The notes beneath the pieces are model-generated. The model searched no databases. It was not told the DNA's origin and worked only from the letters and a program-made list of their open reading frames with translations. From IMG/VR virus record IMGVR_UViG_3300009093_000035, positions 184,580-248,579 of that record: DNA of 64,000 nt; one strand, given 5' to 3'. This document shows, piece by piece, positions 3,863-16,646 of this stretch (positions are counted from its first letter, which is position 1; each line of letters begins with the position of its first letter). A program made the position numbers and the translations under genes.

Positions 3863-3933
3863 TTCTCGGCCGTGGGATCGAACCACGATTCGCGGATTCA
3901 AAGTCCGCTGTCCTGCCGTTGGACGAGCCGAGA
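3863..3933 (-). tRNA. tRNA-Gln(UUG)
   Basis: Cloverleaf; anticodon arm GCGGA-CTTTGAA-TCCGC. Confidence 0.9.
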
Positions 3934-3937
3934 TCAA

Positions 3938-4013
3938 TTCGGGAGGAAGGGGTCGAACCTTCTTCTGCGGATTCAAAGTCCGCGGTCCTAGCCAGCGCGT
4001 AGACGACTCCCGA
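3938..4013 (-). tRNA. tRNA-Gln(UUG)
   Basis: Cloverleaf; GCGGA-CTTTGAA-TCCGC. Confidence 0.85.
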
Positions 4014-4196
4014 TCAACGCTCGAAGGAGCGTCGTTGCAGGAGAGCCGGAAGCTGGCGCTTGAATTCGGGCCGCAAGATGGAGAACCTTCGCGAGAAGAT
4101 ACCCCACTCGGACGCGGACGTCTCCTCGAAAAGCGGGATGTACACATACCCGCCTTCAGTTCGGAGCCCGTCCTTCTTCGTCTCGCTCATCTTACA

Positions 4197-4268
4197 TGAC
4201 CCCACGGGGAATTGAACCCACGTTCCGGAGGGTGAAAATCTCCGATCCTAACCAATAGACGATGGGGC
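4197..4268 (-). tRNA. tRNA-Glu(UUC)
   Basis: Cloverleaf; loop TTTTCAC. Confidence 0.85.
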
Positions 4269-4289
4269 CAAGAGGAAACCAGAAACCAG

Positions 4290-4362
4290 AGCCCTCAGTC
4301 GGGATCGAACCGACGACATCCGCATTACAAGGGCGGTGCTCTTCCAACTGAGCTATGAGGGC
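4290..4362 (-). tRNA. tRNA-Thr(UGU)
   Basis: Cloverleaf; loop CTTGTAA. Confidence 0.9.
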
Positions 4363-4393
4363 GAAGGAAGGGGCGGCGAACCGCCCCTCTCAC

Positions 4394-6028: not shown

Positions 6029-6055
6029 GGTAACACCCCTTCGAACAAAGGAGGG

Positions 6056-6085
6056 CTCTGGCAACTGGATAGGAGTTCCTTCAGG
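6056..6085. repeat. Arm 1 of a 30-nt long-range inverted repeat (partner 14426-14455)
   Basis: Reverse complement CCTGAAGGAACTCCTATCCAGTTGCCAGAG matches 14426-14455 at 28/30. Confidence 0.9.
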
Positions 6086-6229
6086 AAGATTGAACGTGAG
6101 GTCGTTGACGACGAACGCTTGCGTAGAGCGTTGTCCGCGGAGGTTCAGGAGGCTGATCAATTCCTCCCGTAGGCAAGCCTACTTAGCACCAACGTAGAGC
6201 GTCGCCGACAACTCGGCCTGACCTCACGA

Positions 6230-6301
6230 AGCGGGTGGTGGGAATCGAACCCACGATCTTCGCGTTGGCAACGCGCTGCTCTACCGCTGAGCTACACCCG
6301 C
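6230..6301 (-). tRNA. tRNA-Gly(GCC)
   Basis: Cloverleaf; loop TTGCCAA. Confidence 0.9.
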
Positions 6302-6367
6302 AAAAGAAACTGAGACCCATAGCGACCCGACGTCCCGCGATTACCTCCTCCCCAAGGAGAAACGACC

Positions 6368-6772
6368 ATGGGACTTGATATGCAGCAGCCGTCCGTTGTT
6401 ACCGTCGATGACACCAGCATCGACGCCCTCTACGATGGGATCCCCGAGGATTGCGTCGTGGGGTACGTTCTGAGGGTAATCGCCGCCTCGGACGCTGGAT
6501 ACGCCCACTGGGAGAAACGATTCCTCGCTCGTCGCGTGGGGGAAAGCGAAGTGATCATCGACGGGATCTGCGACGTCTTCCCGCCCATCCTGAACGCCGG
6601 AGCTTCAGCCTGGGCGGTCGAGGTATGCGTCGACAACGGATACGTCTGTGTAGACGTCCAAGGCTCGGCTGATACCCAGGTCTTCTGGTTGGTCGATCTC
6701 CACGGAGACGAGATCCCCACGGTCTCCAACGACCGCATGAACCTGAGGACCTCTCGGCGACTCGCGAGATAG
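6368..6772 (+). CDS. Hypothetical beta-rich protein, paralog of 36891-37298
   Basis: AAGGAG SD; colinear similarity with the 36891-37298 product. Confidence 0.7.
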   Translation: MGLDMQQPSVVTVDDTSIDALYDGIPEDCVVGYVLRVIAASDAGYAHWEKRFLARRVGESEVIIDGICDVFPPILNAGASAWAVEVCVDNGYVCVDVQGSADTQVFWLVDLHGDEIPTVSNDRMNLRTSRRLAR

Positions 6773-6786
6773 ACCCTCGAAGAATC

Positions 6787-6903
6787 TGTCGAGCGAAGCC
6801 GAGGTCTGGAATCGAACCAGAGGGTAGCTCCGCGGAAGCTGGGGACCACCCCACAACGGAATCGAACCGTCTCCCTGCCAATGTCTCCCGATCTCGCTCG
6901 ACA
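6787..6903 (-). ncRNA. Structured RNA with two T-loop arms in a closed stem
   Basis: 10-bp closing stem TGTCGAGCGA/TCGCTCGACA; ACGG-TTCGATT-CCGT and TCTGG-TTCGATT-CCAGA. Confidence 0.6.
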
Positions 6904-6988
6904 CGGAGAGTTGAGGTCCCGCCCCTCATGCCCTTACGGGCACCCATTGTTTAGCAAACAAGGCTGGTCCTCGACCAGGTAACCCTCC
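6904..6988 (-). tRNA. tRNA-Ser(GCU), non-canonical 8/4 fold
   Basis: 8-bp acceptor GGAGGGTT/AACTCTCC, G73, 6-bp D stem, loop TTGCTAA, long V arm, 4-bp T stem GAGG-GGCGGGA-CCTC. Confidence 0.8.
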
Positions 6989-7023
6989 AAACACGTTACT
7001 AACGGACGCTCACGCGAACCGGA

Positions 7024-7110
7024 CGGAGAGTGAGGGACTCGAACCCCCGAGGGCCTCTCGACCCATGCCGGTGTTCAAAGCCGGTGCCTTAGCCGCTAGG
7101 CTAACCCTCC
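7024..7110 (-). tRNA. tRNA-Ser(UGA)
   Basis: Canonical 7/5 cloverleaf, long V arm, loop TTTGAAC. Confidence 0.9.
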
Positions 7111-7191
7111 AGGAGTCTGAGAAACCCGCGCTAATCGAAGACGCCCTTGCCTCTTCGGAGGCATGCTCGCCAGAGCTAGGTTTCCCAGACA

Positions 7192-7276
7192 CGGAAGCTG
7201 GAGGTCCCGACCCTCAGAGCCTTTCGACTCCCAACCGCTTTCGAGACGGTGCCGATCCCTGATCGGTTCAACTTCC
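7192..7276 (-). tRNA. tRNA-Ser(CGA), non-canonical 8/4 fold
   Basis: Acceptor GGAAGTTG/CAGCTTCC, D stem CCGATC/GATCGG, loop CTCGAAA, T arm GAGG-GTCGGGA-CCTC. Confidence 0.8.
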
Positions 7277-7384
7277 AATTCTACGTTCTGGCCCCGCCAC
7301 GGAGCCTAGACGACCAGGCAAACTGGCGGGTCGATTGGATGGAGACCTTTGCGTCTCGGATCCGTCGCAGGCCAGAACCTAGAG

Positions 7385-7469
7385 CGGAAAGGAAGGGTCC
7401 CGACCCCCAGACCCTTTCGAGTCCCAACCGCTTTCCAAGCGGTGCCGGCCCCTGGCCAGTTCCCTTTCC
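7385..7469 (-). tRNA. tRNA-Ser(GGA), non-canonical 8/4 fold
   Basis: Acceptor GGAAAGGG/TCCTTTCC, D stem CTGGCC/GGCCGG, loop TTGGAAA, T arm GGGG-GTCGGGA-CCCT. Confidence 0.8.
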
Positions 7470-7473
7470 AAAC

Positions 7474-7634
7474 AGCTCGCTCGTCTCAGCGTGTATAGCC
7501 ATCACACTTCATCATCGTCGTCGCTACTCGGATTCGAACCGAGTCTCCTGGGCTCTACCATAGCGTGGCGCCAGCCACTCTCGCTCCGATTCTGATGCAC
7601 GGATTCGAACCGTGAACTCTGAGACTCACGAACC
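7474..7634 (-). ncRNA. Double tRNA-elbow RNA (permuted tRNA module enclosing a second T-arm module)
   Basis: Closing GTCTCAG/CTGAGAC; T arm CACGG-TTCGAAT-CCGTG; CATCA/TGATG; D-like GTGT-GATGGCTAT-ACAC; inner GCTA..CTCGG-TTCGAAT-CCGAG-TAGC. Confidence 0.6.
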
Positions 7635-7651
7635 TTCGGGCTGCAGCCCTA

Positions 7652-7772
7652 CCCGGAACGCGGGATTCGAACCCGCCTGAAGGGAAGGGTTGCTAGACCT
7701 CCCCACCGCCGCCTTTCCCTGTCCTCTAGCGAACAGGTACAGACAGCCGCTCACCATCTGGCGTACTTCCGA
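7652..7772 (-). ncRNA. tRNA-like RNA with elongated anticodon and variable arms
   Basis: CGGAA/TTCCG acceptor, AGATGGT D-loop, GCGGG-TTCGAAT-CCCGC T arm; two long hairpins with complementary loops GCTAGA/TCTAGC. Confidence 0.55.
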
Positions 7773-7844
7773 TCGGGGTGACAGGGATCGAACCTGCGAT
7801 TTCTCGACCCCCAGCCGAGCGCGATACCACTTCGCTACACCCCG
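7773..7844 (-). tRNA. tRNA-Pro(GGG)
   Basis: Cloverleaf; CTCGG-CTGGGGG-TCGAG. Confidence 0.9.
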
Positions 7845-7897
7845 AAGAAACTAGAAGACCGAGGTCCTGGAGCCTTTCAACTCCAGGACCGATCAGG

Positions 7898-8446
7898 TCA
7901 GGACCCCTCTTCGATCGGAGCATTCCAGTACACGTAGGAGGCCCACGCGTCCGGGATGTTCGTCAACGAAAACCGCATGGTGACTACCGGGAGATACGCG
8001 GGCTTCACGGGCTGCTTGCGCAGCTTCATCCCCGCGCGCTCCGGAGTCCGGTCGGCCTTCTTCTCGTTGCACGAGTAGCAGGCCATCACGATGTTCTCCC
8101 AGGTCGTCCTACCGCCGTGAGAGCGGGGGGTGACGTGGTCGTACGTGAGCTTCGAGAGCGGGAGCTTCCCGGTACCCGGAGGGCAGTACTGACAGGTGAA
8201 GTTGTCCCGCGTCGCTACGTTCACCCGAGAGAACTTCACGGCCTGCTTCTTGCCGCGGATCCTCCCGAGGAGACGAACGACGGCCGGCATCTTGAAGGAG
8301 AGGGTCACGTGGATTTCCTCGTTGTACTCCTCCACTACCTCGGCGACGTTGTCGAGGACCATACACACGGCCCTCTGCCAGTCCACGATCCTGTGGGGTA
8401 CCCACCCCTGATCCAATACGAGAGTTGTTTGCACGGCCTTACCCAC
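7898..8446 (-). CDS. HNH endonuclease (McrA-like)
   Basis: RDNFTCQYC, LTYDHVTPRSHGGRTTWENIVMACYSCNEKK; type often found in tRNA arrays. Confidence 0.92.
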   Translation of the reverse strand: MGKAVQTTLVLDQGWVPHRIVDWQRAVCMVLDNVAEVVEEYNEEIHVTLSFKMPAVVRLLGRIRGKKQAVKFSRVNVATRDNFTCQYCPPGTGKLPLSKLTYDHVTPRSHGGRTTWENIVMACYSCNEKKADRTPERAGMKLRKQPVKPAYLPVVTMRFSLTNIPDAWASYVYWNAPIEEGS

Positions 8447-8469
8447 CTTTCCTGAGCTGTTGTTTTGGT

Positions 8470-8552
8470 TGCGAGAGGAGGGAGTCGAACCCTCACGCCC
8501 CGAAGGGCACCGATTTTTGAGACCGGCGCGTCTGCCATTCCGCCACTCTCGC
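8470..8552 (-). tRNA. tRNA-Leu(CAA)
   Basis: Cloverleaf, V arm; loop CTCAAAA. Confidence 0.92.
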
Positions 8553-8578
8553 GTCTACTGAAACTTACTCGAAAGGGA

Positions 8579-8664
8579 TGCCCGGGGGGAGAGTCGAACT
8601 CCCACGACCGCTAGGATCGCCGCCTTCTGAGGACGGTGTGTCTACCAAGTTCCACCACCCGGGC
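8579..8664 (-). tRNA. tRNA-Leu(CAG)
   Basis: Loop CTCAGAA, V arm. Confidence 0.92.
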
Positions 8665-8680
8665 TCAAAAACCTACTCAC

Positions 8681-8762
8681 TGCGGAAGAGGGGACTTGAA
8701 CCCCTACGCCACAAGGACACTGGAACCTAAACCCAGCGCGTCTGCCATTCCGCCACTTCCGC
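8681..8762 (-). tRNA. tRNA-Leu(UAG)
   Basis: Loop TTTAGGT, V arm. Confidence 0.92.
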
Positions 8763-8768
8763 TCTACA

Positions 8769-8851
8769 TGGGGACGGGGGGACTTGAACCCCCACGTCAC
8801 GAAGGACACTAGCACCTCAAGCTAGCGCGTCTGCCTTTCCGCCACGTCCCC
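8769..8851 (-). tRNA. tRNA-Leu(GAG)
   Basis: Loop TTGAGGT, V arm. Confidence 0.92.
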
Positions 8852-8868
8852 ATTACGAATCGAACCAG

Positions 8869-8954
8869 TGCTCGGGGGGAGAGTCGAACTCCCATGACCG
8901 CGAAGGATCGTTGGATTCTTAGTCCAGTGTGTCTGCCAGTTCCACCACCCGAGC
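8869..8954 (-). tRNA. tRNA-Leu(AAG)
   Basis: Loop CTAAGAA, Leu-type D and V arms. Confidence 0.85.
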
Positions 8955-9030
8955 GTACGAACCGAAGATTGTCCAAGATCGAGAGGGGCCCTCCGAGGAA
9001 TCCCTCGGGGGCTGATCCTCCCGTCCGGTA

Positions 9031-9102
9031 TGCGCGAAGAGGGGATTGAACCCCCGACCGTCGCCGTGTAAAGGCGCTGCTCTTCCGCTGAGCTATCCGC
9101 GC
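9031..9102 (-). tRNA. tRNA-Val(UAC)
   Basis: Loop TTTACAC. Confidence 0.9.
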
Positions 9103-9107
9103 GTTGA

Positions 9108-9199
9108 TGGACCTACCTGGACTCGAACCAGGTCAATCGCCGCTCGACCACCCCAGGTTTTCCTTGCTGTGAGGCGATTACGTCACTGAGGTTAGGCCC
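9108..9199 (-). ncRNA. Mini-tmRNA-like RNA (tRNA-like domain only)
   Basis: Acceptor GGGCCTA/TAGGTCC with G3.U70 and A73, stemless D region, helix AATCGCC/GGCGATT, GA then CCTGG-TTCGAGT-CCAGG. Confidence 0.6.
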
Positions 9200-9302
9200 A
9201 TCGAATTGGTTCTCCATGCGCGCTATTCGGAGGAGAAGCCCGAAATGTACGGCGACCGGACTACGTGGCCCACACCACCCGTTATGTCGCTGCGCTTTGG
9301 TC

Positions 9303-9375
9303 TGCACGACCGGAGGATCGAACTCCGCTAGAACGGCTTGTGATACCGTCGCCCTCTCCAGATGGCTCGCCGTGC
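9303..9375 (-). tRNA. tRNA-Val(CAC), atypical D arm
   Basis: GACGGT-ATCACAA-GCCGTT; acceptor GCACGGC/GTCGTGC. Confidence 0.75.
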
Positions 9376-9521
9376 GTCAGGCTCGTCTCGACCCGCGGCC
9401 CCCGAGAGGGCGGAACCCCATCAGGACCATCACTACCGCCACCGGGGGCCAGAGGATGGACTCGACTGCGAGACGAACACGTACTTTGAAGGGCATCCCC
9501 TACCCTACTCGAAGAAACCAA

Positions 9522-9593
9522 TCGGGGTGACAGGGATCGAACCTGCGATCTCACCGTCCCGAACGGTGCGCGATACCACTTCGCTACACCCCG
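9522..9593 (-). tRNA. tRNA-Pro(CGG)
   Basis: CACCG-TTCGGGA-CGGTG. Confidence 0.92.
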
Positions 9594-9769
9594 ATAAATC
9601 GTACTTCGGCGGGTCTCTCACCCCGCATCCTTCCAGGTCCGGATTCCCGTCCGTCTACGCGGCCTTGTACCGCTCCCTCGCTGCTTGTCGTCAGCGGCCC
9701 TGTACGATCGTTCACGAGAAGGGTTCGCCCCGACGCTGCAGACGCCGAGACTACTTTTCCGACTCGCTA

Positions 9770-9838
9770 TCCCTCCCGACGGAATCGAACCGCCTCGTAC
9801 GCCCGTATGAAAGGCATCGCCTCGCCAGAAAGAGAGGG
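9770..9838 (-). tRNA. tRNA(CAU) (Met or Ile2) lacking a D stem
   Basis: Acceptor CCCTCTC/GGGAGGG, loop TTCATAC, T arm GGCGG-TTCGATT-CCGTC. Confidence 0.6.
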
Positions 9839-9845
9839 GTGGACA

Positions 9846-9918
9846 CGTCTCCAGTAGGATTCGAACCTACAATGGACCCTTCGGAGGGGTCAGTGATATC
9901 CAGTTTCACCATGGAGAC
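9846..9918 (-). tRNA. tRNA-Arg(CCG)
   Basis: GACCC-CTCCGAA-GGGTC. Confidence 0.88.
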
Positions 9919-9941
9919 ATTGGCCTTCTACCAAACCAGAG

Positions 9942-10013
9942 CGTCTTCGGAAGGATTCGAACCTTCAATAAGCGGTTCGTAGCCGCTCGTGATATCCATT
10001 TCACCACGAAGAC
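9942..10013 (-). tRNA. tRNA-Arg(ACG)
   Basis: AGCGG-CTACGAA-CCGCT. Confidence 0.9.
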
Positions 10014-10031
10014 ATGAGTCAGAAACAGGAG

Positions 10032-10103
10032 CGTCCACGGAGGGAGTTGAACCCACGACCTGTCGCTTCGTAGGCGACCGCTCTTCCTCTGAGCTACGCG
10101 GAC
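10032..10103 (-). tRNA. tRNA-Arg(ACG)
   Basis: GTCGC-CTACGAA-GCGAC. Confidence 0.9.
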
Positions 10104-10115
10104 ATGAACCGAGAG

Positions 10116-10187
10116 CGTCCCCGGAGGGATTCGAACCCCCGACCGACCGCTTAGAAGGCGATCGCTCTTCCTCTGAGCTACGAGGAC
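10116..10187 (-). tRNA. tRNA-Arg(UCU)
   Basis: Loop CTTCTAA. Confidence 0.9.
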
Positions 10188-10214
10188 ATTGGCTTGCACG
10201 GAAACCCCTACGAA

Positions 10215-10286
10215 AGGTGCGGGTGAGAATCGAACTCACCTCAACCAGGGTTGCAATCTGATGCCCTCAGCCAGAGGGACCGCACC
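10215..10286 (-). tRNA. tRNA-Cys(GCA)
   Basis: Loop TTGCAAC, U73. Confidence 0.8.
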
Positions 10287-10299
10287 AAAGAGAACTAGA

Positions 10300-10363
10300 G
10301 GCCGACAAGTAGCGCCGAGAGGGGGTTACCGTGCAAAGGTGTACTCCCGGCAAGTATTCGGCC
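10300..10363 (-). ncRNA. Y RNA-like #1 (minimal)
   Basis: 5' GGCCGAAU..GGAGUACA / 3' CUUGUCGGCC stem shared with five other copies. Confidence 0.7.
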
Positions 10364-10365
10364 AG

Positions 10366-10437
10366 AGCGGGTGGCGGGGATCGAACCCGCGACGTCCTGG
10401 ATGGGAACCAAGCGCTCTACCGCTGAGCCACACCCGC
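10366..10437 (-). tRNA. tRNA-Gly(CCC)
   Basis: Loop TTCCCAT. Confidence 0.9.
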
Positions 10438-10523
10438 TTGTATTAGATCGAAGTTACGGAAGTTACCAGACCTTATCGAACCTCATGGTAACTCTCGGCT
10501 ACATGGACGGAACCAGAAACCAG

Positions 10524-10594
10524 AGCGGGCAGCGAGAATCGAACTCGCGTCTTCGGCTTGGAAGGCCGAGGCCAAGCCACTTGACCATGCCCGC
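10524..10594 (-). tRNA. tRNA-Gly(UCC)
   Basis: TCGGC-CTTCCAA-GCCGA. Confidence 0.88.
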
Positions 10595-10606
10595 ATACGA
10601 ACCGGA

Positions 10607-11012
10607 TGGACTCGTCCGGAATTGAACCGGAGTCCACGAAGTCTACTACGATCGAGTACCACGCGCGTCTTCAACTCTTACGCCTGTCTTTCTAACGAGG
10701 AAGGCGCGAGGCTTGACAACCTCTCTTTCGGAACTCCCCGCGAAGTCTGCTCGGTTCCCCGCCTCGACTTCGATCGTCCCTCAGATCGCCTTTCGGCTCC
10801 CGCTGAGGTACAGCCGGGATTCCCCTAGCTCGATTACGCCAACGAGGAGAGTGCTAGGGACTCTCCTCGCCGACGGATCAGGCCGCCTGAGCGAGCTGAT
10901 CGTAGCTGCTGTCGTTCGCAGTTACTGTTGGTTGGCTTGATAACCCGGCCTGCCTACCACCCGGAGCGCGCACTCTCTCGTTTCGAACCCCATGTCGAAA
11001 CCTGTCGAGCCC
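10607..11012 (-). ncRNA. ssrA: tmRNA; tag ANDSSYDQLAQAA* at 10878-10919
   Basis: 5' GGGCTCGACAGGTTTCGAC, 3' GGACTCCGGTTCAATTCCGGACGAGTCCA, G3.U70, resume context TAACT-GCG AAC GAC. Confidence 0.95.
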
Positions 11013-11028
11013 GAAGACACTAGACCAG

Positions 11029-11101
11029 AGCCATCGGCGGGAGTTGAACCCGCGACCTCTCGCATACCAAGCGAGCGCTCTTCCAACTGAGCTACGAAGG
11101 C
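11029..11101 (-). tRNA. tRNA-Thr(GGU)
   Basis: Loop TTGGTAT. Confidence 0.9.
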
Positions 11102-11106
11102 AAAAG

Positions 11107-11179
11107 AGCCGGCAGGGGCGCTCGAATCCCCCATCTCCCGCTTACGAAACGGGCGCATCGCCATCTATGCTTTACCGGC
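11107..11179 (-). tRNA. tRNA-Thr(CGU)
   Basis: Loop TTCGTAA. Confidence 0.8.
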
Positions 11180-11276
11180 AAGTTCCCAAGGTGTCCCGAG
11201 AGGACCACTCTCGTTCTTCCGAGGGCGCTTGGACGTTTTTCAAGGGTTGCTGGTTAGGCTCCTCTCACCGTCCTAG

Positions 11277-11348
11277 TGGATCCTACAGGGATTGAACCTG
11301 CGGCCTCTCGGGTGCAAACCGAGCGCTCTCCCGCTGAGCTAAGGACCC
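11277..11348 (-). tRNA. tRNA-Ala(UGC)
   Basis: Loop TTTGCAC, G3.U70. Confidence 0.92.
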
Positions 11349-11352
11349 AAAG

Positions 11353-11420
11353 TGGACCGAGCGGATTCGAACCGCTTCCTTCCGTGTTCCACGGACGCTC
11401 TTCCTTTTGAGCTACGATCC
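11353..11420 (-). pseudogene. tRNA-like element with collapsed anticodon loop
   Basis: Normal D and T arms, but anticodon arm TCCGTG-GAA-CACGGA and 6-bp acceptor. Confidence 0.6.
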
Positions 11421-11478
11421 TCTGTCTCGCCCCGGAAGCGAAACAGTTCGTCAATCGTCCGCGCGAACGACCAACTAG

Positions 11479-11551
11479 TGGACAAGAGGGGGATCGAACC
11501 CCTGACCTACGCCATGCCATGGCGTCGCTCTCCCAGCTGAGCTACTCGCCC
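11479..11551 (-). tRNA. tRNA-Ala(GGC)
   Basis: Loop ATGGCAT, G3.U70. Confidence 0.92.
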
Positions 11552-11820
11552 AAAACGACCCTCGGTAATACAGGCCGCCAACGAAGGAACAAGGCTACTC
11601 TCGTCCGACTCCCGAAGGAATCGTTCTCGTACGTGTCTCCGACCCGGGGCTCCTAGAAGCGCGGAACCGGAACCGACGCGAGATGATCCTCACCGACAAG
11701 GATCGACAGGTACTGCACGGTCTGCTTGCGCCTACCGTTTCCCTCCTTGAGTTTGGAGCCGGACCCGCCTAGGGTTTCTCGCCACCACAGCGTCCTAGGT
11801 CGGGTTGGTGTCCGGCGTGA

Positions 11821-11890
11821 TCGCGGCCCCAAGAGTTGAACTTGGCATCCCTGGGTTATGAGCCCTGGGCAGCGTCCCCGCTGCACCGCA
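11821..11890 (-). tRNA. Atypical initiator-like tRNA(CAU) with miniature D arm
   Basis: GGG-CTCATAA-CCC; D arm CAGCG-GGGA-CGCTG. Confidence 0.6.
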
Positions 11891-11897
11891 TCTACAA

Positions 11898-11971
11898 GAG
11901 CGCGAGAAGGATTTGAACCTCCGACCTACGGGTTATGAGCCCGTCGAGCTGCCAGACTGCTCCACCGCGCA
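11898..11971 (-). tRNA. tRNA-fMet(CAU)
   Basis: Three G-C pairs in the anticodon stem, 1-72 mismatch. Confidence 0.85.
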
Positions 11972-12043
11972 TCGTCCAGGTGGGGATCGAACCCACGACC
12001 TTCCGCGTGTCGAGCGGATGCTCTTCCTCTGAGCCACTGGACG
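11972..12043 (-). tRNA. tRNA-Val(GAC)
   Basis: TCCGC-TCGACAC-GCGGA. Confidence 0.88.
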
Positions 12044-12061
12044 GTCTCGATCTAAGAACCA

Positions 12062-12134
12062 TGGAGCAGATGGGATTCGAACCCAACGCACCTCGTGTAT
12101 CAGACGAAGTAGTGCGACCAGCAACTTCCGCTCC
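12062..12134 (-). tRNA. tRNA-Ile(GAU)
   Basis: Loop CTGATAC. Confidence 0.75.
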
Positions 12135-12154
12135 GTTTTCGAGCCAGACACTAG

Positions 12155-12228
12155 GGTGATCGGGGGGAGTTGAACCCACCGTACCTCGGGTCACAGCCGA
12201 GTGCCTTAACCGTTAGGCTACGACCACC
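12155..12228 (-). tRNA. tRNA-His(GUG) with encoded G-1
   Basis: CTCGG-CTGTGAC-CCGAG; G-1:C73. Confidence 0.9.
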
Positions 12229-12239
12229 ATGAAGAGATT

Positions 12240-12371
12240 CGGGTGACAAGAGCGGAGAAGACGTTTTTTGGACTGCCGCTCTACCATCTGAGCTACCACC
12301 CCCTTTCGGAGACGGGCGGGACTCGAACCCGCGACCCGCAGTGTTGTTGTAGTCCTATTCCAATTCACCCG
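12240..12371 (-). ncRNA. Y RNA-like #2 (YrlA-type, permuted tRNA module)
   Basis: CGGGUGAAU..GACUACA / CUUGUCACCCG; T arm GCGGG-TTCGAGT-CCCGC, GAAA-capped acceptor, then D arm TAGCTCAGATGGTAGAGC. Confidence 0.85.
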
Positions 12372-12372
12372 A

Positions 12373-12445
12373 CGTTCCCGGGAGGACTCGAACCTCCGAC
12401 CTGCCGTTTAGGAAACGGCCCCTCTATCCACTGAGGTACGGGAAC
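12373..12445 (-). tRNA. tRNA-Arg(CCU)
   Basis: GCCGT-TTCCTAA-ACGGC. Confidence 0.9.
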
Positions 12446-12449
12446 ACGA

Positions 12450-12588
12450 TTGCGAGAGAGGGACTTGAACCCCCACGAGCGCTTCCGTTACTTCCCTGGG
12501 AAGCGCTTCCCGTACGGGTTTCACGGATGGGCCTAGGACCCTGTCTCTCCGAGTCGCCTCGGCGCGTCTGCCATTTCGCCATCTCGCA
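12450..12588 (-). ncRNA. Anticodon-less oversized tRNA-Leu mimic A
   Basis: Acceptor TGCGAGA/TCTCGCA, Leu D arm GGCGAAATGGCAGACGC, anticodon arm capped by GCGA, three hairpins in the variable region, normal T arm. Confidence 0.7.
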
Positions 12589-12596
12589 TCGAACAC

Positions 12597-12748
12597 TAGG
12601 GAGAAGGGGAATCGAACCCCCACCGGGCTCTACAGGACTCTCCGCGGTTCGCGACCCTCGGATCCTCCCGTTGGCTCGGGGTGCGCACCCCTTACCGTCC
12701 CTGCCGGAACTTTCATCCCGGTGCGTCTACCAGTTCCGCCATCTCCCG
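12597..12748 (-). ncRNA. Anticodon-less oversized tRNA-Leu mimic B
   Basis: Leu D arm GGCGGAACTGGTAGACGC, CCGGGAT-GAAA-GTTCCGG, ~80-nt structured variable region, normal T arm. Confidence 0.7.
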
Positions 12749-12770
12749 TCAACGAACGGAAGGAAAAGTT

Positions 12771-12903
12771 TGGGCGACAAGTGTTGGCGAAGATCTTTTC
12801 GTCGCTCTACCAACTGAGCTACCGCCCCGTGAAAGTGGGGCGGGCTGGACTCGAACCAGCGGCCTCCGGCTTGAAATGCTGTAATCCTCTCCGAATTCAC
12901 CCA
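12771..12903 (-). ncRNA. Y RNA-like #3 (YrlA-type)
   Basis: UGGGUGAAU..GAUUACA / CUUGUCGCCCA; GCTGG-TTCGAGT-CCAGC, closed acceptor CCGCCCC/GGGGCGG, D arm TAGCTCAGTTGGTAGAGC. Confidence 0.85.
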
Positions 12904-12904
12904 A

Positions 12905-12977
12905 CGTTCCCGGAGGGGATCGAACCCCCGACCTGCGGTTTCGAAGACCGCCGCTCTTCCGGCTGAGCTACGAGAAC
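12905..12977 (-). tRNA. tRNA-Arg(UCG)
   Basis: GCGGT-CTTCGAA-ACCGC. Confidence 0.9.
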
Positions 12978-13019
12978 CCTCGATTTATGGCTTCGAGGTA
13001 CCTTTGCGCGCGAAGGAAG

Positions 13020-13094
13020 CGTCCCGTGGGGGATTTGAACCCGCCGTCGCCAGATTGAGAGTCTAGCATCCTAGGCCAACTAGAAGAACGGGAC
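13020..13094 (-). tRNA. tRNA-Glu(CUC)
   Basis: Loop CTCTCAA. Confidence 0.88.
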
Positions 13095-13099
13095 ATAGA

Positions 13100-13175
13100 G
13101 GCGAGACAAGAGAGACCGAGACGAGGGGCTTTCGCCCCACATTACCCAAAATGTAGTCCCGATCGAATTCTCACC
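13100..13175 (-). ncRNA. Y RNA-like #4 (minimal)
   Basis: GGUGAGAAU..GACUACA / CUUGUCUCGCC; GGGGC-GAAA-GCCCC hairpin. Confidence 0.72.
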
Positions 13176-13176
13176 A

Positions 13177-13249
13177 TGGACAGGAGGGGGATTGAACCCC
13201 TGACCTCTGCATTGCGAACGCAGCGCTCTCCCAGCTGAGCTACCCGCCC
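13177..13249 (-). tRNA. tRNA-Ala(CGC)
   Basis: Loop TTCGCAA, G3.U70. Confidence 0.92.
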
Positions 13250-13390
13250 AAACGAAAACCAGGTTCTCGAATCGGACTCGGGTAGGTCGATTCCCTTTCG
13301 GGAGGTGGCCTACCCTATCCCTAGCTCCTCGGGCCTGGCGCTACCGAGAAGATCCGAGCCAGCGAGGACCGAGGTCCCCGCGAAGATAGC

Positions 13391-13514
13391 CGTGCGACAA
13401 GAGTGACAGCGACGTTTTCTAGGCCCGAGCCTCGCTCCCTTTCGGGAACGACCAGGATTCGAACCTGGCTCGATTGTTGTTCATACAATGTAGTCCCCAT
13501 CGAGTATTCGCACG
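13391..13514 (-). ncRNA. Y RNA-like #5 (T arm plus GAAA-closed acceptor, degenerate D arm)
   Basis: CGUGCGAAU..GACUACA / CUUGUCGCACG; CCAGG-TTCGAAT-CCTGG; TCGTTCCC-GAAA-GGGAGCGA. Confidence 0.8.
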
Positions 13515-13516
13515 AG

Positions 13517-13589
13517 TCGGGATGACCGGATTCGAACCGACGTCTCCTGCGCCCAAGGCAGGTGCTAAACCAGGCTCAGCTACATCCCG
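13517..13589 (-). tRNA. tRNA-Pro(UGG)
   Basis: CCTGC-CTTGGGC-GCAGG. Confidence 0.9.
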
Positions 13590-13600
13590 AACAGAAACCA

Positions 13601-13676
13601 TGCAGCGAACTGGAGTTGAACCAGTGCCTCCCGGGTTTCAACCGAGCGCTCTACCTATGGGCTGAGCTATCGCTGC
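13601..13676 (-). tRNA. tRNA-Phe(GAA)
   Basis: Loop TTGAAAC. Confidence 0.85.
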
Positions 13677-13679
13677 GTA

Positions 13680-13752
13680 TGCTACGGGTCGGAATTGAAC
13701 CGACGACACCCCGCTCTTCAGGCGAGTGCTCTACCAACTGAGCTACCGTAGC
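13680..13752 (-). tRNA. tRNA-Phe(GAA)
   Basis: Loop CTGAAGA. Confidence 0.9.
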
Positions 13753-13758
13753 AAGACA

Positions 13759-13832
13759 CGCCCCCGAAGAGAATCGAACTCTCCTCGACCCTGCTTGACA
13801 AGCAGGCGTCTTCACCAGAGGACTACGAGGGC
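13759..13832 (-). tRNA. tRNA-Asp(GUC)
   Basis: CCTGC-TTGTCAA-GCAGG. Confidence 0.88.
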
Positions 13833-13850
13833 AGGAACCAGGAAATTTAA

Positions 13851-13939
13851 GGCGACAAAGATCCCGAAGACACAGAGCGAGCCTTTCGGCCCTCTCTTCT
13901 GGTTTTGGTAGAAGAATGTAGTCTTCAGAGCATTCGCCC
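13851..13939 (-). ncRNA. Y RNA-like #6 (minimal)
   Basis: GGGCGAAU..GACUACA / UUUGUCGCC; GAAA-capped hairpin. Confidence 0.7.
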
Positions 13940-13940
13940 A

Positions 13941-14008
13941 CGGGCTGTTAGGGACTCGAACCCAGCGCGGTCGGTTTTGGAGGCCAACCTGTGCCCTGCA
14001 CCCAGCCC
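13941..14008 (-). tRNA. tRNA-Trp(CCA) with miniature D arm
   Basis: Loop CTCCAAA; D arm GTGC-AGG-GCAC. Confidence 0.7.
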
Positions 14009-14157
14009 AATAGCTGAGACCGTCCGGCCTACGGGCCCGCACGATCTCGTACCTCCTCCTACACATGGCAGGTGAGATCTAAGAATAGCGACCGGCGCTC
14101 GCCCCGAGTGCTCGTCCTCCCTACCGGAGGCTGCGTTCTCGAAGTGCTTTCGGTCTA

Positions 14158-14229
14158 CTCCTGGGGCAGGAGTCGAACCTGCGGTAGGCGAGTTAACAGC
14201 TCGCTGCCTTACCACTTGGCTACCCAGGA
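14158..14229 (-). tRNA. tRNA-Asn(GUU)
   Basis: GCGAG-CTGTTAA-CTCGC. Confidence 0.92.
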
Positions 14230-14269
14230 AGGATCTCAACGGACCCCATCGGAAGAAACGAAGGAGGAA

Positions 14270-14341
14270 CTCCGGCAGTAGGGGTCGAACCTACGACATC
14301 CTGGTTAACAGCCAGGCGCTCTTCCACTGAGCTATACCGGA
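14270..14341 (-). tRNA. tRNA-Asn(GUU)
   Basis: CCTGG-CTGTTAA-CCAGG. Confidence 0.92.
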
Positions 14342-14425
14342 ATGTGAGGGAGGCCCTCCCGTACCCGAGCCCTTGCGAGGCGATTCGAGTACGAGAGTCC
14401 CCTCTCCGCGCCCTTGGGGAGGGCG

Positions 14426-14455
14426 CCTGAAGGAACTCCTATTCAGTTGTCAGAG
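14426..14455. repeat. Arm 2 of the long-range inverted repeat; boxA-like on the minus strand
   Basis: Minus strand CTCTGACAACTGAATAGGAGTTCCTTCAGG. Confidence 0.85.
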
Positions 14456-14516
14456 ACCTCGGAACACAGAGAGCCGTAGTTCACTACGTACTCCAGCCAC
14501 AGGGTGGCTTTTTCAA

Positions 14517-14587
14517 TTCCCAGTCGAGGATTCGAACCTCAGTTGTCCGAGTCAGATTCGGAAGTCCTGCCGCTAGACGAACCGGGA
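14517..14587 (-). tRNA. tRNA-Gln(CUG)
   Basis: TCCGA-ATCTGAC-TCGGA. Confidence 0.88.
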
Positions 14588-14659
14588 TGGGACACCGGGG
14601 ACTCAAACCCCGTTCTTCCGATTAAGAGTCGGATGCTTCATCACTAAAGCTTGTGTCCC
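14588..14659 (-). tRNA. tRNA-Lys(CUU)
   Basis: TCCGA-CTCTTAA-TCGGA. Confidence 0.85.
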
Positions 14660-14677
14660 GAACTGGAACCGAGGAAC

Positions 14678-14749
14678 TGGGACCGGTGGGGATCGAACCC
14701 ACGACCGTCGGGTTAAAAGCCCGCTGTTCTACCGCTGAACTACGGTCCC
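14678..14749 (-). tRNA. tRNA-Lys(UUU)
   Basis: Loop CTTTTAA. Confidence 0.9.
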
Positions 14750-14796
14750 GAGAGGGGAACCGCAGGGTTTGAGGTTGACGTACATCTTTCGAACCA

Positions 14797-14879
14797 TGGA
14801 GACGCCAGGAATCGAACCTGATTTCCTCCGAAGAGGGGCGGGGTTACAGTCCGCCTACGAGGCCACTCGTATCATCTCC
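14797..14879 (-). tRNA. tRNA-Tyr(GUA)
   Basis: Loop CTGTAAC, V arm. Confidence 0.8.
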
Positions 14880-14890
14880 AAAAGGAACCA

Positions 14891-14974
14891 TGGAGTGTGA
14901 GGGATTCGAACCCTCAATGTCCGAAGACTCCTGATTTACAGTCAGGTGGGGCTACCAATGCCCACGTACACTCC
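14891..14974 (-). tRNA. tRNA-Tyr(GUA)
   Basis: CCTGA-CTGTAAA-TCAGG, V arm. Confidence 0.82.
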
Positions 14975-15041
14975 GCGAGAGAAACCGAGCCGAACCGAAG
15001 TCGAGGAACCGAACGAGAGGACCGAGGGAAACCAGGACCCT

Positions 15042-15082
15042 AAAACGACTTCAGGCCGCCCGGGTTTCCCTGGGCGGCCTGA
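15042..15082 (-). terminator. Intrinsic terminator / attenuator hairpin upstream of the RNA operon
   Basis: TCAGGCCGCCCAGGG-AAA-CCCGGGCGGCCTGA followed by AGTCGTTTT. Confidence 0.65.
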
Positions 15083-15112
15083 CATCATCCCTTTGGGGGG
15101 TAGAGAGTCAGG

Positions 15113-15253
15113 TCACCCGGGGGTACCCTGGAGGTGGCGCGCGATCAGATCCGAGGCTACCGCGACCGTTCCTTCCAAGGCGCACCACGCCGTATTCGGC
15201 TCGGAGGCCGGATACATGCTTGAAGGCTTGGAGGTAAAGGTTTTGGAAGACAT
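15113..15253 (-). CDS. Putative 46-aa leader peptide (uORF) of an attenuator
   Basis: MSSKTFTSKPSSMYPASEPNTAWCALEGTVAVASDLIARHLQGTPG*; stop overlaps an antiterminator strand. Confidence 0.5.
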   Translation of the reverse strand: MSSKTFTSKPSSMYPASEPNTAWCALEGTVAVASDLIARHLQGTPG

Positions 15254-16608
15254 GATCGCCGGTTACAGGTTGACTTTTCGAAGCTAGTACAGGCCGAAGA
15301 GGGAGTCTAGGGAAATCGACTCGGGTGAGTCACTTTCTTTTTCGTCGCCTTCTCGCCGGACTGTTACGCCGTCCCGATCCAGTTCGGTGAATCTTTTTCC
15401 GCTAACTGGAAAAGTCCACTTTATTCGCCCAGGTAGACGAAGCGATCTTCGCTCTCAAGGAGGCGTCGATCGTAGCAACAGAGGTCGGATTGGCCCACCC
15501 TCCCTCACACTGAGGCGTCATCGGAGCCAACTCGATCAGAACTGGAGCGACTACGTCCTCCCAGAAGGACCACCAGTATCCAGCGTTCTCTTCGAAGTTC
15601 GGGAAGACGTACACCACCGGAGAAGGAGCCGCTCTACTTCCCCGAGGGAAGACCGGCTTCCTCTTCTCCGAAAGGATCCCCCAGCAGTCGTTCAGAAGAC
15701 GCTTGTAGGAGACGTTCGAACGGTAGGGAGACGTCACAGAGGAACCTCTTCTTCCCGACTCCCCATAGAGAAGATACACGTCCGCCCGAGGATCTCGCGA
15801 TCCCCAAGTAGAGGAGACGGATCTCTCCGCTCCTGTCACCCCTTCGAGCTTCTCGGGACTCTTCGCTCTCTCGCTACCCTAACAAGGACTACAACGACAA
15901 CGTCTACAATCACCTACAGCAGAAGGACTAGAACCAGAACTACACATTGGGTTTGTATCAGTTGGAGTAGAAGCTCAACTACACAGTTGATTGAAGATCA
16001 CACAATCAATCTATCCCTCTAATCCCCTAACTACTTCTCTGGATCTCCCTTACGGGAAGTTCCTTGTTCCACCTAGCTCGGGATCCTTCTCCGAGGAGAA
16101 GGCGAGACTACCAACTGGAACGGGGGAGGTGATGATCGAGGAGGTCTGTTCTTACCGTAACTACCTCTGAGAGCCTCGTACGTAGGCTAACTTGCGGTGG
16201 GAGTCTTTCCATCGGGAAGGAGGTCTGGGGAACTCTCTCCGTAGGGGTTCGTCCGATAGCGCCCACATAGCTCTATGACCCTTTCGAGTCTGAGACCCCG
16301 TAAGTAACTCCTGTTGGAGGAGGAACTCTCTGTCCCCAAGGTCGGACCGAGTATCCCTTGTGGGGAGGAACTCGGAAGACAGTGGGAGGGAATCTCACGG
16401 TCGAGATCTCCGAAGAGATCCCGAGGACGAACCAGGGTGGGGTTATACGGGAGCTTTTTTCTTGAGTCTACCCACGACCGTAGACACACTGCGGAGACGC
16501 CAGGAAGACCTGTAGGAACCCTTGGGGTGTCGGGGAGGAAGATCCGGGTGTCCGAGGAGATCGACAGCTCCTCGGGGCTCCTAGGGGTAAGTGTTGGCCG
16601 ACCGGAGA

Positions 16609-16637
16609 GGTGTAGAACCTCTTGGCTCGTCCGTTAC
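16609..16637 (+). promoter_or_regulatory. Bipartite phage promoter motif upstream of the CCA enzyme
   Basis: GGTGTA-N13-CGTCCGTTAC. Confidence 0.7.
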
Positions 16638-16646
16638 AGGTAGAAC

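What the first reader, a model, noticed from the sequence alone, without database searches (positions are those of the whole stretch)
15042..15310. Leader-peptide attenuator gating the whole tRNA/Y-RNA/Ro60 operon
Seen (minus strand): possible sigma70 promoter TAGACT-N17-TAGCTT, a 46-codon uORF and a GC-rich terminator. The uORF stop region CCCGGGTGACCTGAC can pair with the terminator 5' arm GTCAGGCCGCCCAGGG as an antiterminator. A ribosome at the stop would favour termination; stalling upstream would favour read-through. Inference: the operon is induced when host defences impair translation.
Basis: partly seen in the sequence, partly recalled or inferred. Interest (0 to 1): 0.7.

Follow-up and report, generated by a model that had tools for sequence, protein, structure and literature searches.

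The report
Translated leader switch before phage tRNAs
At the head of a huge soil phage's block of about 45 tRNA genes sits a conserved short reading frame whose stop codon lies inside an RNA strand that competes with a strong terminator-like hairpin, which looks like a ribosome-sensing on/off switch for the phage's own translation-support genes, though no experiment has tested it.

Summary

The module recurs in six diverged relatives, always at the head of the tRNA array.
- The hairpin covaries significantly.
- The ORF keeps its ATG, frame and length. At least 7 indel events are multiples of three.
- The UGA stop always falls inside the strand that pairs with the hairpin's 5' arm.
- That alternative helix is the predicted fold of the nascent RNA in 6/6, and it matches the hairpin in energy.

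The peptide itself is barely constrained. Its "conserved" residues coincide with RNA helices inside the ORF.

Two soil metatranscriptomes hold contigs of close variants that cover only the leader and stop at or before the hairpin.

Weak points:
- There is no Shine-Dalgarno.
- The U-tract is short and displaced.
- Covariation of the antiterminator is not significant.
- The promoter is non-canonical.

Gating of the whole operon and induction by host defence remain untested.

Verdict: probably a ribosome-mediated transcription attenuator, a known mechanism in a new setting (confidence about 0.5).

The parts
15402..15737 (-). Upstream conserved 111-aa gene of unknown function. It anchors the synteny.
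   Evidence: Homologues of 49-57% identity lie beside the leader in relatives. No Pfam hit.
15313..15347 (-). A-run, small hairpin (GACUC-ACCC-GAGUC, 15331-15318) and U-run. This terminator-like element closes the upstream unit.
   Evidence: The scan called it on the + strand. It is conserved in A4, with GACUC/GAGUC in the window against GACCG/CGGUC in L003. Mean pairwise identity is 0.58.
15281..15309 (-). Promoter-like motif TAGACT-N17-TAGCTT
   Evidence: T(A/G)GAC and the first two bases (TA) of the second hexamer are conserved in 6/6 at a fixed spacing, while the spacer is not conserved (0.86 against 0.28 identity). The motif is unique in the genome. No transcription start is known.
15113..15253 (-). 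Leader ORF of 46 codons plus UGA
   Evidence: ATG, frame and a length of 42-49 codons are kept in six lineages, and two more called peptides of 49 and 44 aa exist. All indels upstream of the stop region are multiples of three. It is the only frame open in 6/6.
15193..15214 (-). Hairpin A inside the ORF (UAUCCGGC / GCCGAAUA), spanning codons YPA..PNT
   Evidence: RNAalifold predicts it. 88% of cells pair, and covariation exceeds the shuffles (4-5 of 1000 reach it).
15136..15191 (-). Helix P2 inside the ORF (15191-15181 with 15143-15136), enclosing the variable middle of the ORF
   Evidence: Predicted. 90% of cells pair, 4 pairs change on both sides, and only 1-12 of 1000 shuffles reach the observed values.
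15107..15123 (-). 5' strand of the antiterminator, containing the UGA stop (15115-15113)
   Evidence: It pairs with 15083-15066 in the predicted fold of the nascent RNA in 6/6 homologues. It is the best partner of the 5' arm in 6/6. 87% of cells pair and the register is specific, but covariation is not significant.
15089..15100 (-). Small apical hairpin (CCC..GGG) between the two strands of the antiterminator
   Evidence: Present in all six predicted folds. L005 has CCUCG/CGAGG in its place.
15051..15083 (-). Terminator-like hairpin: 5' arm 15083-15068, loop 15067-15065, 3' arm 15064-15051
   Evidence: 98.6% of cells pair, 4 pairs change on both sides, and 0 of 500 shuffles reach the observed score. 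Energy is -25 to -30 kcal/mol in all six. It is unique in the genome.
15037..15050 (-). Conserved tail AGUCGUUUUAGGGU with a short, displaced U-run
   Evidence: Mean pairwise identity is 0.69, against 0.15 for the spacer that follows. Each homologue has 3-5 U in the first 10 nt.
3863..14974 (-). Downstream co-directional array: 45 tRNAs called by ARAGORN, tmRNA (11012-10607), YrlA-like RNAs (12903-12768 and 12371-12252), Ro60 (6160-4394) and an HNH endonuclease (8446-7898)
   Evidence: That it is one transcription unit is inferred from the shared strand only.

Best explanation
This is a ribosome-mediated transcription attenuator at the head of the phage's tRNA/tmRNA/Y-RNA/Ro60 array.

**Proposed mechanism**
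1. Transcription starts at a conserved promoter-like motif and runs into a structured leader of about 230 nt that carries a short ORF.
2. The leader can fold in two mutually exclusive ways of about equal stability.
   - In the first, the strand that holds the ORF's UGA stop pairs with the 5' arm of the hairpin. This is the antiterminator, and it permits read-through into the tRNA genes.
   - In the second, the 5' arm pairs with the 3' arm. This is the terminator, and the transcript ends.
3. The antiterminator strands are transcribed first, so read-through is the default.
4. A ribosome that has translated the leader and sits on the UGA covers the antiterminator strand and lets the terminator form. 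The UGA is followed by C in 5 of 6 homologues, which is a slow termination context in E. coli.
5. Fast, healthy translation therefore shuts the array. Slow, stalled or absent translation opens it.

**Shown here**: the sequence elements, their conservation, and the predicted folds and energies.

**Inferred**: the transcription start, translation of the ORF, termination at the hairpin, the direction of the switch, and its physiological trigger.
For: **Conservation of the module**
- It is present in six diverged homologues (51% mean column identity), each lying directly upstream of the first tRNA of an array.

**Terminator hairpin**
- 98.6% of cells pair, four pairs show compensatory changes, and 0 of 500 shuffles reach the observed score.
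- It is among the strongest hairpins in 248 kb.

**Antiterminator**
- It is the predicted fold of the nascent RNA in 6/6.
- Its energy is -25 to -35 kcal/mol, against -25 to -30 for the terminator.
- The stop-codon window is the best partner of the 5' arm in 6/6, within the top 0.03-2% of genome windows.
- The register is specific: 87% of cells pair, against 19-55% when the partner is slid.

**The ORF is maintained, but the peptide is not**
- ATG and frame are kept, and at least 7 indel events upstream of the stop region are multiples of three.
- A further 3-nt insertion appears in a variant.
- The stop is always UGA inside GGGYG(G)ACYUGA, which supplies a stop in two frames, so frame changes near the end still terminate there.
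- dN/dS is 0.34-1.1, and the three codon positions are equally variable (20/17/21).
- The conserved residues coincide with RNA hairpin A and helix P2, both of which covary.

**RNA data**
- Contigs from two soil metatranscriptome runs cover only the leader of close variants and stop at or before the hairpin.
- DNA contigs run through into tRNA-Tyr.
Against: - There is no conserved Shine-Dalgarno before the ATG, although 27 of 40 called genes of this phage group have one.
- The U-run is short (3-5 U) and separated from the stem by about 5 nt. The consensus scan did not call a terminator here.
- Antiterminator covariation is not above the shuffles (356-514 of 1000 reach it). In L005 one hairpin change is compensated in the 3' arm but not in the antiterminator strand, leaving an A.C mismatch.
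- There are no runs of regulatory codons, and no conserved region-1 partner for the antiterminator strand.
- The second promoter hexamer ends in T in only 3 of 6 homologues.
- The RNA runs were found by searching with the leader itself, so they are biased towards it. Contigs also give no true transcript ends, and one RNA contig (X1) extends upstream of the proposed promoter.
- Only six homologues were available, and there is no cultured host.
Confidence: 0.5

Rival explanations
1. It is an ordinary small gene with its own promoter and a strong terminator. On this reading the 46-aa product acts in trans, the hairpin simply ends or stabilises its mRNA, and the tRNA array is transcribed by leak-through or from unrecognised promoters. 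The complementarity at the stop codon would be incidental, or would serve mRNA stability.
For: - The ORF is conserved in 8 lineages, and gene callers called three of them.
- A core Y-P-A-x-x-P-N-T-x-W-C-A-L persists in the distant members P0128 and P0132.
- RNA contigs cover the ORF as a discrete unit.
- Antiterminator covariation is not significant.
Against: - dN/dS is near 0.5-1, with no excess of third-position changes.
- The residue before P-N-T varies (E/K, and M in P0128). In the five homologues with that core whose DNA is known, its codon always ends in G, as hairpin A requires.
- The stop position is kept inside the pairing strand even when the frame differs.
- No Pfam hit, and no convincing atlas relative.
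- It always sits at the head of the tRNA array.
Confidence: 0.17
2. It is a riboswitch-like or factor-controlled leader. On this reading the structured 5' domain (hairpin A and P2) binds a ligand, protein or RNA such as a tRNA and sets the terminator/antiterminator choice, and translation of the ORF is irrelevant.
For: - Hairpin A and P2 covary, and they account for most of the sequence conservation inside the ORF.
- There is no Shine-Dalgarno.
- The layout of a structured domain followed by an antiterminator/terminator platform resembles that of riboswitches.
Against: - All indels in the 'aptamer' part are multiples of three. The ATG is invariant and the frame is open in every lineage, which a non-coding RNA has no reason to keep.
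- No Rfam family matches 15040-15310, T-box included, even at E up to 1.
- The antiterminator strand is not part of P2, so no structural link from the domain to the switch is visible.
Confidence: 0.15
3. It is a processing or stability element, not a terminator. On this reading the hairpin is an RNase III/E or exonuclease-blocking site that separates a leader RNA from the tRNA precursor, and the alternative fold modulates cleavage.
For: - The U-run is weak and displaced.
- The tail motif UUYUAGGG is conserved beyond what termination needs.
- tRNA precursors are heavily processed, and the RNA contigs end near the hairpin.
Against: - Other strong hairpins of this genome carry tails of the same style, for example UUUUCGUUUCUAG at G000 145396-145439. 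That fits phage or host terminators of this style.
- Nothing here identifies a nuclease site.
Confidence: 0.13

Closest known systems
Classical leader-peptide attenuators of amino-acid operons (trpL, hisL, pheL, thrL, leuL, ilvL; Yanofsky model, from established knowledge)
   Same: A short ORF lies upstream of a hairpin terminator. An antiterminator shares the terminator's 5' arm. The stop codon is placed so that a terminating ribosome masks the antiterminator strand. There are structured elements inside the leader.
   Different: There are no tandem regulatory codons and no conserved 1:2 anti-antiterminator. The ORF is long at 46 codons. The downstream genes are tRNAs, tmRNA, Y RNAs and Ro60 rather than biosynthetic enzymes. 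The setting is a phage. No Rfam leader family matches.
Stall-responsive leader ORF attenuators of resistance genes (ermK, vmlR, lmo0919, bmrCD type; ribosome-mediated attenuation found by Term-seq, from established knowledge)
   Same: They sense the general state of translation rather than one amino acid. A ribosome stalled in the leader favours the antiterminator and read-through, while unhindered translation favours termination.
   Different: Those leaders are usually much shorter and respond to specific antibiotics through defined arrest contexts. No arrest motif was identified here, and the host and trigger are unknown.
pyrBI leader (pyrL, 44 codons) of E. coli
   Same: The leader ORF is of similar length, and the coupling between ribosome and polymerase decides termination.
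   Different: In pyrBI the ORF runs through the terminator, and a closely following ribosome prevents the hairpin from forming. Here the ORF ends about 30 nt before the hairpin, and the predicted polarity is the opposite.
T-box riboswitches
   Same: There is a terminator/antiterminator choice in a leader that is linked to tRNA biology.
   Different: There is no Stem I, specifier or T-box motif, and no RF00230 hit at E up to 1. The ORF is under frame selection.

Membership tests
Leader-peptide (ribosome-mediated) transcription attenuator | A short ORF with a start codon lies in the leader, upstream of the regulated genes | tested here: met
   The ORF has 46 codons at 15253-15113. ATG and frame are kept in six lineages, and indels are multiples of three.
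Leader-peptide (ribosome-mediated) transcription attenuator | An intrinsic terminator (stable hairpin plus U-tract) lies between the leader ORF and the first gene | tested here: inconclusive
   The hairpin is strong and covaries. The U-run has only 3-5 U and starts about 5 nt after the stem, and the consensus scan did not call it.
Leader-peptide (ribosome-mediated) transcription attenuator | A mutually exclusive antiterminator uses the terminator's 5' arm | tested here: met
   It is the predicted fold of the nascent RNA in 6/6, its energy equals the terminator's, and it is the best partner in 6/6. Caveat: covariation is not significant.
Leader-peptide (ribosome-mediated) transcription attenuator | Ribosome position on the ORF decides which fold forms, meaning the stop or stall site overlaps the antiterminator strand | tested here: met
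   The UGA lies inside the pairing strand in 6/6, even where the frame differs. This is geometry only; function was not tested.
Leader-peptide (ribosome-mediated) transcription attenuator | The ORF is actually translated, and translation changes read-through | not testable with these tools
   There is no conserved Shine-Dalgarno. RNA contigs show only that the leader is present in RNA libraries.
Classical amino-acid attenuators (trp/his/leu/thr/phe/ilv type) | Tandem codons for the regulating amino acid occur in the leader peptide | tested here: not met
   None of the eight peptides has a run of one residue.
Classical amino-acid attenuators (trp/his/leu/thr/phe/ilv type) | A 1:2 pairing sequesters the antiterminator strand when there is no translation | tested here: not met
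   The best upstream partners differ in position between homologues and are no better than 2-13% of random windows.
T-box riboswitch | A match to the T-box covariance model (Stem I, specifier loop and T-box sequence) | tested here: not met
   No Rfam match lies in 15040-15310 at E up to 1.
Sigma-70-type promoter | -35 and -10 hexamers close to consensus at 16-18 nt spacing | tested here: inconclusive
   TAGACT-N17-TAGCTT matches 7 of 12 positions. T(A/G)GAC and the TA of the second hexamer are conserved in 6/6, but the final T in only 3/6. The scan did not call it, and no transcription start is known.

The most novel reading that the evidence does not exclude
A huge phage carries a feedback sensor of host translation performance. 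A translated, structured leader reads how fast ribosomes reach and clear a UGA stop. It opens transcription of the phage's own ~45 tRNAs, tmRNA, Y RNAs and Ro60 only when translation falters, for example after tRNA depletion or cleavage by host defence or shut-off. This would be the first attenuator known to control tRNA genes, and the first known in a virus's translation-support module.
Probability: 0.3. Interest if true: 0.8.

Novelty: new variant of a known kind. Interest (0 to 1): 0.62.

Why it matters
Large phages carry big tRNA arrays, and how they time or dose that expression is unknown. A leader that couples array transcription to ribosome performance would give a simple homeostatic rule: make tRNAs, tmRNA and RNA-repair factors when translation is failing. 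It would extend leader-peptide attenuation, until now tied to biosynthetic and resistance genes, to stable-RNA genes and to viruses. It also supplies a compact element of about 270 nt that can be tested in vitro without a cultured host.

Tried and rejected
- **Repeated element?** No. The hairpin and the switch model R1 are unique in the 248.6-kb record.
- **Recurrent phage promoter motif?** No. GATTTnnnTAGAC and TAGAC-N18-TAnnnT occur once.
- **Known RNA family?** None at E up to 1 in 15040-15310.
- **Known protein family for the peptide or the 111-aa neighbour?** No Pfam hit. The atlas search gave low recognition and no family.
- **Close phage relatives in GenBank or IMG/VR?**
  - GenBank phages gave only tRNA-Tyr hits to mycobacteriophages.
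  - Three scans of viral contigs were empty.
  - A degenerate pattern scan of JGI metagenomes returned only the phage's own contigs and chance matches.
- **CCA-enzyme relatives outside the nearest clade** (L004, L019-L021) lack the tRNA array and the leader.
- **Classical four-region scheme with a 1:2 helix:** not conserved.
- **The antisense 113-aa ORF** (14946-15287, +) that a gene caller chose in the phage's own record overlaps tRNA-Tyr and is interrupted in relatives, so it is spurious.
- **TAGGGT after the hairpin as a second promoter:** there is no -35 partner, and it is not kept in 3 of 6 homologues.

Full report
**Setting**

The window is the last 64 kb of a 248.6-kb IMG/VR virus record that CheckV rates 56% complete. 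The same CCA-adding enzyme also occurs on a 472,929-bp contig, so this is a huge phage. The samples that hold it are rhizosphere, soil and peat metagenomes.

On the minus strand, 45 tRNA genes called by ARAGORN, plus a few further tRNA-like matches from Rfam, lie between 14974 and 3863. The same stretch holds:
- a tmRNA (11012-10607);
- two YrlA-like RNAs, both below Rfam's gathering score;
- a Ro60 homologue (6160-4394, with TROVE and vWA_Ro60 domains);
- an HNH endonuclease.

A CCA-adding enzyme is encoded divergently at 16647-17855. The finding sits at the upstream end of the array.

**Observation**

- TAGACT is at 15309-15304, followed by 17 nt and TAGCTT at 15286-15281.
- The ORF runs from ATG 15253 to UGA 15115-15113, 46 codons.
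- The hairpin pairs U15082 with A15051: 14 bp, one bulged A and an AAA loop. The tail is AAGUCGUUUUAGGG.
- CCCGGGUGACCUGAC (15121-15107) is complementary to the hairpin's 5' arm.

The hairpin folds at -29 to -33 kcal/mol, with z = -4.2 against shuffles. It is among the roughly four strongest local hairpins of the whole record and is not a repeated element.

The strand at the stop codon is a two-mismatch direct copy of the 3' arm. With nine other such copies in 497 kb of both strands, one lying within 100 nt is unlikely by chance, at about 0.002.

**Relatives**

GenBank phages and IMG/VR gave nothing useful. I therefore worked through the two neighbouring proteins, the CCA enzyme and a conserved 111-aa protein at 15737-15402. 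This recovered five independent homologous loci from metagenome assemblies: L003, L005 (L006 is the same over this region), L022, L023 and L024.

In each locus the homologous leader lies directly upstream of the first tRNA of an array. In L003 a thaumatin-like gene has been inserted upstream of the leader, and the leader has stayed with the array.

An exhaustive profile search found two more called peptides, P0128 (49 aa) and P0132 (44 aa).

**What is conserved**

Conservation along the six-way alignment is patchy in an informative way.

| Segment | Mean pairwise identity |
|---|---|
| -35-like hexamer | 0.86 |
| Promoter spacer | 0.28 |
| 5' UTR | 0.20 |
| ORF codons 14-27 | 0.69 |
| Two arms of the hairpin | 0.76-0.77 |
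| Tail | 0.69 |
| Spacer to the first tRNA | 0.15 |

Upstream of the promoter-like motif there is a conserved A-run, small hairpin and U-run (15347-13). It looks like the terminator of the preceding unit, so the leader probably starts its own transcript. This is an inference.

The second hexamer keeps TA in 6/6 but its last T in only 3/6. The motif occurs once in the genome. I therefore treat the promoter as plausible but unproven.

**The hairpin**

The stem pairs in 98.6% of cells. Four pairs show compensatory changes: G-C to A-U in three lineages, and two pairs at the base of the stem in L005. No shuffle out of 500 reaches the observed score, and sliding the partner destroys the pairing. It is a selected RNA structure.

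**The alternative fold**

I cut the RNA just before the 3' arm, to mimic the nascent transcript. In all six homologues the minimum-energy fold then pairs the stop-codon strand with the 5' arm, around a small apical hairpin.

- The energy is -25 to -35 kcal/mol, against -25 to -30 for the terminator.
- In three homologues the alternative even wins in the full-length fold.
- The stop-codon window is the best partner of the 5' arm within the leader in 6/6, with duplex energies in the top 0.03-2% of random genome windows.
- In an alignment that places the one-base indel correctly, 87% of cells pair. The register is specific, at 19-55% when slid.
- Covariation is no better than shuffled columns.
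- One position shows G.U, G-C, A-U, G.U and A-U, but A.C in L005. There the hairpin's change was compensated in the 3' arm only.

The alternative pairing is therefore real and kept, but its support is conservation and energetics, not covariation statistics.

**The ORF**

The ATG is invariant and the length is 42-49 codons. It is the only one of six frames open in all six homologues.

All indels upstream of the stop region are multiples of three, which makes at least seven events. By my own arithmetic, that has a chance of about 5e-4 if frame did not matter. A close variant in an RNA run adds another 3-nt insertion.

The stop is always UGA and always lies inside GGGYG(G)ACYUGA. This motif offers a UGA in two frames. 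L003, L005 and L022 reach it in a different frame and still stop inside the pairing strand. Five of the six stops are followed by C.

The peptide, by contrast, is hardly constrained.
- dN/dS is 0.34-1.1.
- The three codon positions vary equally, at 20, 17 and 21 of 38 columns.
- The residues that look conserved (Y-P-A, P-N-T, W-C-A-L) coincide with hairpin A (15214-15193) and helix P2 (15191-15181 with 15143-15136). Both covary above the shuffles.
- The residue before P-N-T varies (E/K, and M in P0128). In the five homologues with that core whose DNA is known, its codon ends in G, as the hairpin needs.

What selection keeps is a translatable frame that ends at a fixed place in a structured RNA. 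That is the signature of a cis-acting leader ORF, not of a small protein.

**RNA data**

Two soil metatranscriptome runs of one study hold contigs of close variants, each differing from the window at 7-9 bases.
- The first contig covers 15292-15097 plus 53 upstream letters that do not match the window.
- The second starts at 15258 and ends five bases into the 3' arm.
- Nothing else in 13000-17000 is covered by this phage in the first run, nor in 14850-15450 in the second.
- DNA contigs from peat run straight through the hairpin into tRNA-Tyr.

This fits an abundant leader RNA that ends near the hairpin. However, the runs were found by searching with the leader itself, contigs do not give true ends, and DNA carry-over cannot be excluded.

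**Mechanism**

The simplest reading is a three-strand attenuator. The antiterminator forms first, so read-through is the default. A ribosome that reaches the UGA covers 15123-15107 and hands the 5' arm to the 3' arm, which causes termination. Slow, stalled or absent translation therefore opens the array.

I found no conserved fourth strand that would impose termination without translation, and no codon runs. It therefore works like the stall-sensing leaders of resistance genes rather than like trp or his.

Hairpin A and P2 may be pause or timing structures. That is speculation.

**Weak points**
- There is no conserved Shine-Dalgarno, although two thirds of called genes in this phage group have one.
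- The U-run is short and displaced.
- Canonical promoters and terminators are not enriched in this genome at all, so consensus rules may fit its host badly.
- Whether this single site gates all 13 kb down to Ro60 is untested, and so is the idea that host defences trigger it.

**Verdict**

- The mechanism class is known. Its use in front of a viral tRNA/tmRNA/Ro60 array appears to be new: two full-text searches found no such case.
- I put about 0.5 on a ribosome-mediated attenuator. The remainder is split between a plain small gene with a terminator, a factor-controlled leader, and a processing element.

Noticed in passing
window 15738-16646: About 900 nt between the 111-aa gene and the divergent CCA-enzyme gene has no called gene. 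Even so, it aligns at 67% identity with L003 3060-3811 and gives no Rfam hit. It may hold an undescribed RNA or regulatory region.
   Followed up: no
window 14798-14879 (-): A tRNA-like gene lies between tRNA-Tyr and tRNA-Lys. ARAGORN does not call it, and Rfam scores it only with the tRNA-Sec model (37.5 bits, below gathering). By eye it looks like a second Tyr-type tRNA with an enlarged anticodon loop. L005 and L023 also carry tRNAs with odd anticodon loops.
   Followed up: partly
window 15313-15347 (-): A conserved A-run, 5-bp hairpin and U-run lie just upstream of the promoter-like motif. The window has GACUC/GAGUC where L003 has GACCG/CGGUC. It looks like a bidirectional terminator, and its U-run is better on the + strand.
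   Followed up: partly
L003 1927-2880 (-): In one relative a 317-aa secreted-looking protein with a thaumatin domain is inserted between the 112-aa gene and the leader.
   Followed up: no
window 14946-15287 (+): The gene call in the phage's own metagenome record is the antisense 109-113-aa ORF, which overlaps tRNA-Tyr and the leader. It is interrupted in relatives and is almost certainly spurious.
   Followed up: yes
window 7898-8446 (-) and 4394-6160 (-): An HNH endonuclease and the Ro60 homologue (TROVE plus vWA_Ro60) are embedded inside the tRNA array. The 539-aa ORF at 1917-3536 that follows has no Pfam hit.
   Followed up: partly
L005 about 4745-4810 (-): One relative has an insertion of about 66 nt, with its own small hairpin (CCCCCAGAAGGGG), between the promoter-like motif and the leader ATG. 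The length of the 5' UTR is therefore not constrained.
   Followed up: no
G000:C1 60432-60476, 97420-97463, 167040-167084: These are the few other hairpins as strong as the leader's (-32 to -35 kcal/mol). They are near-perfect palindromes that fold on both strands and may be bidirectional terminators of this phage.
   Followed up: no
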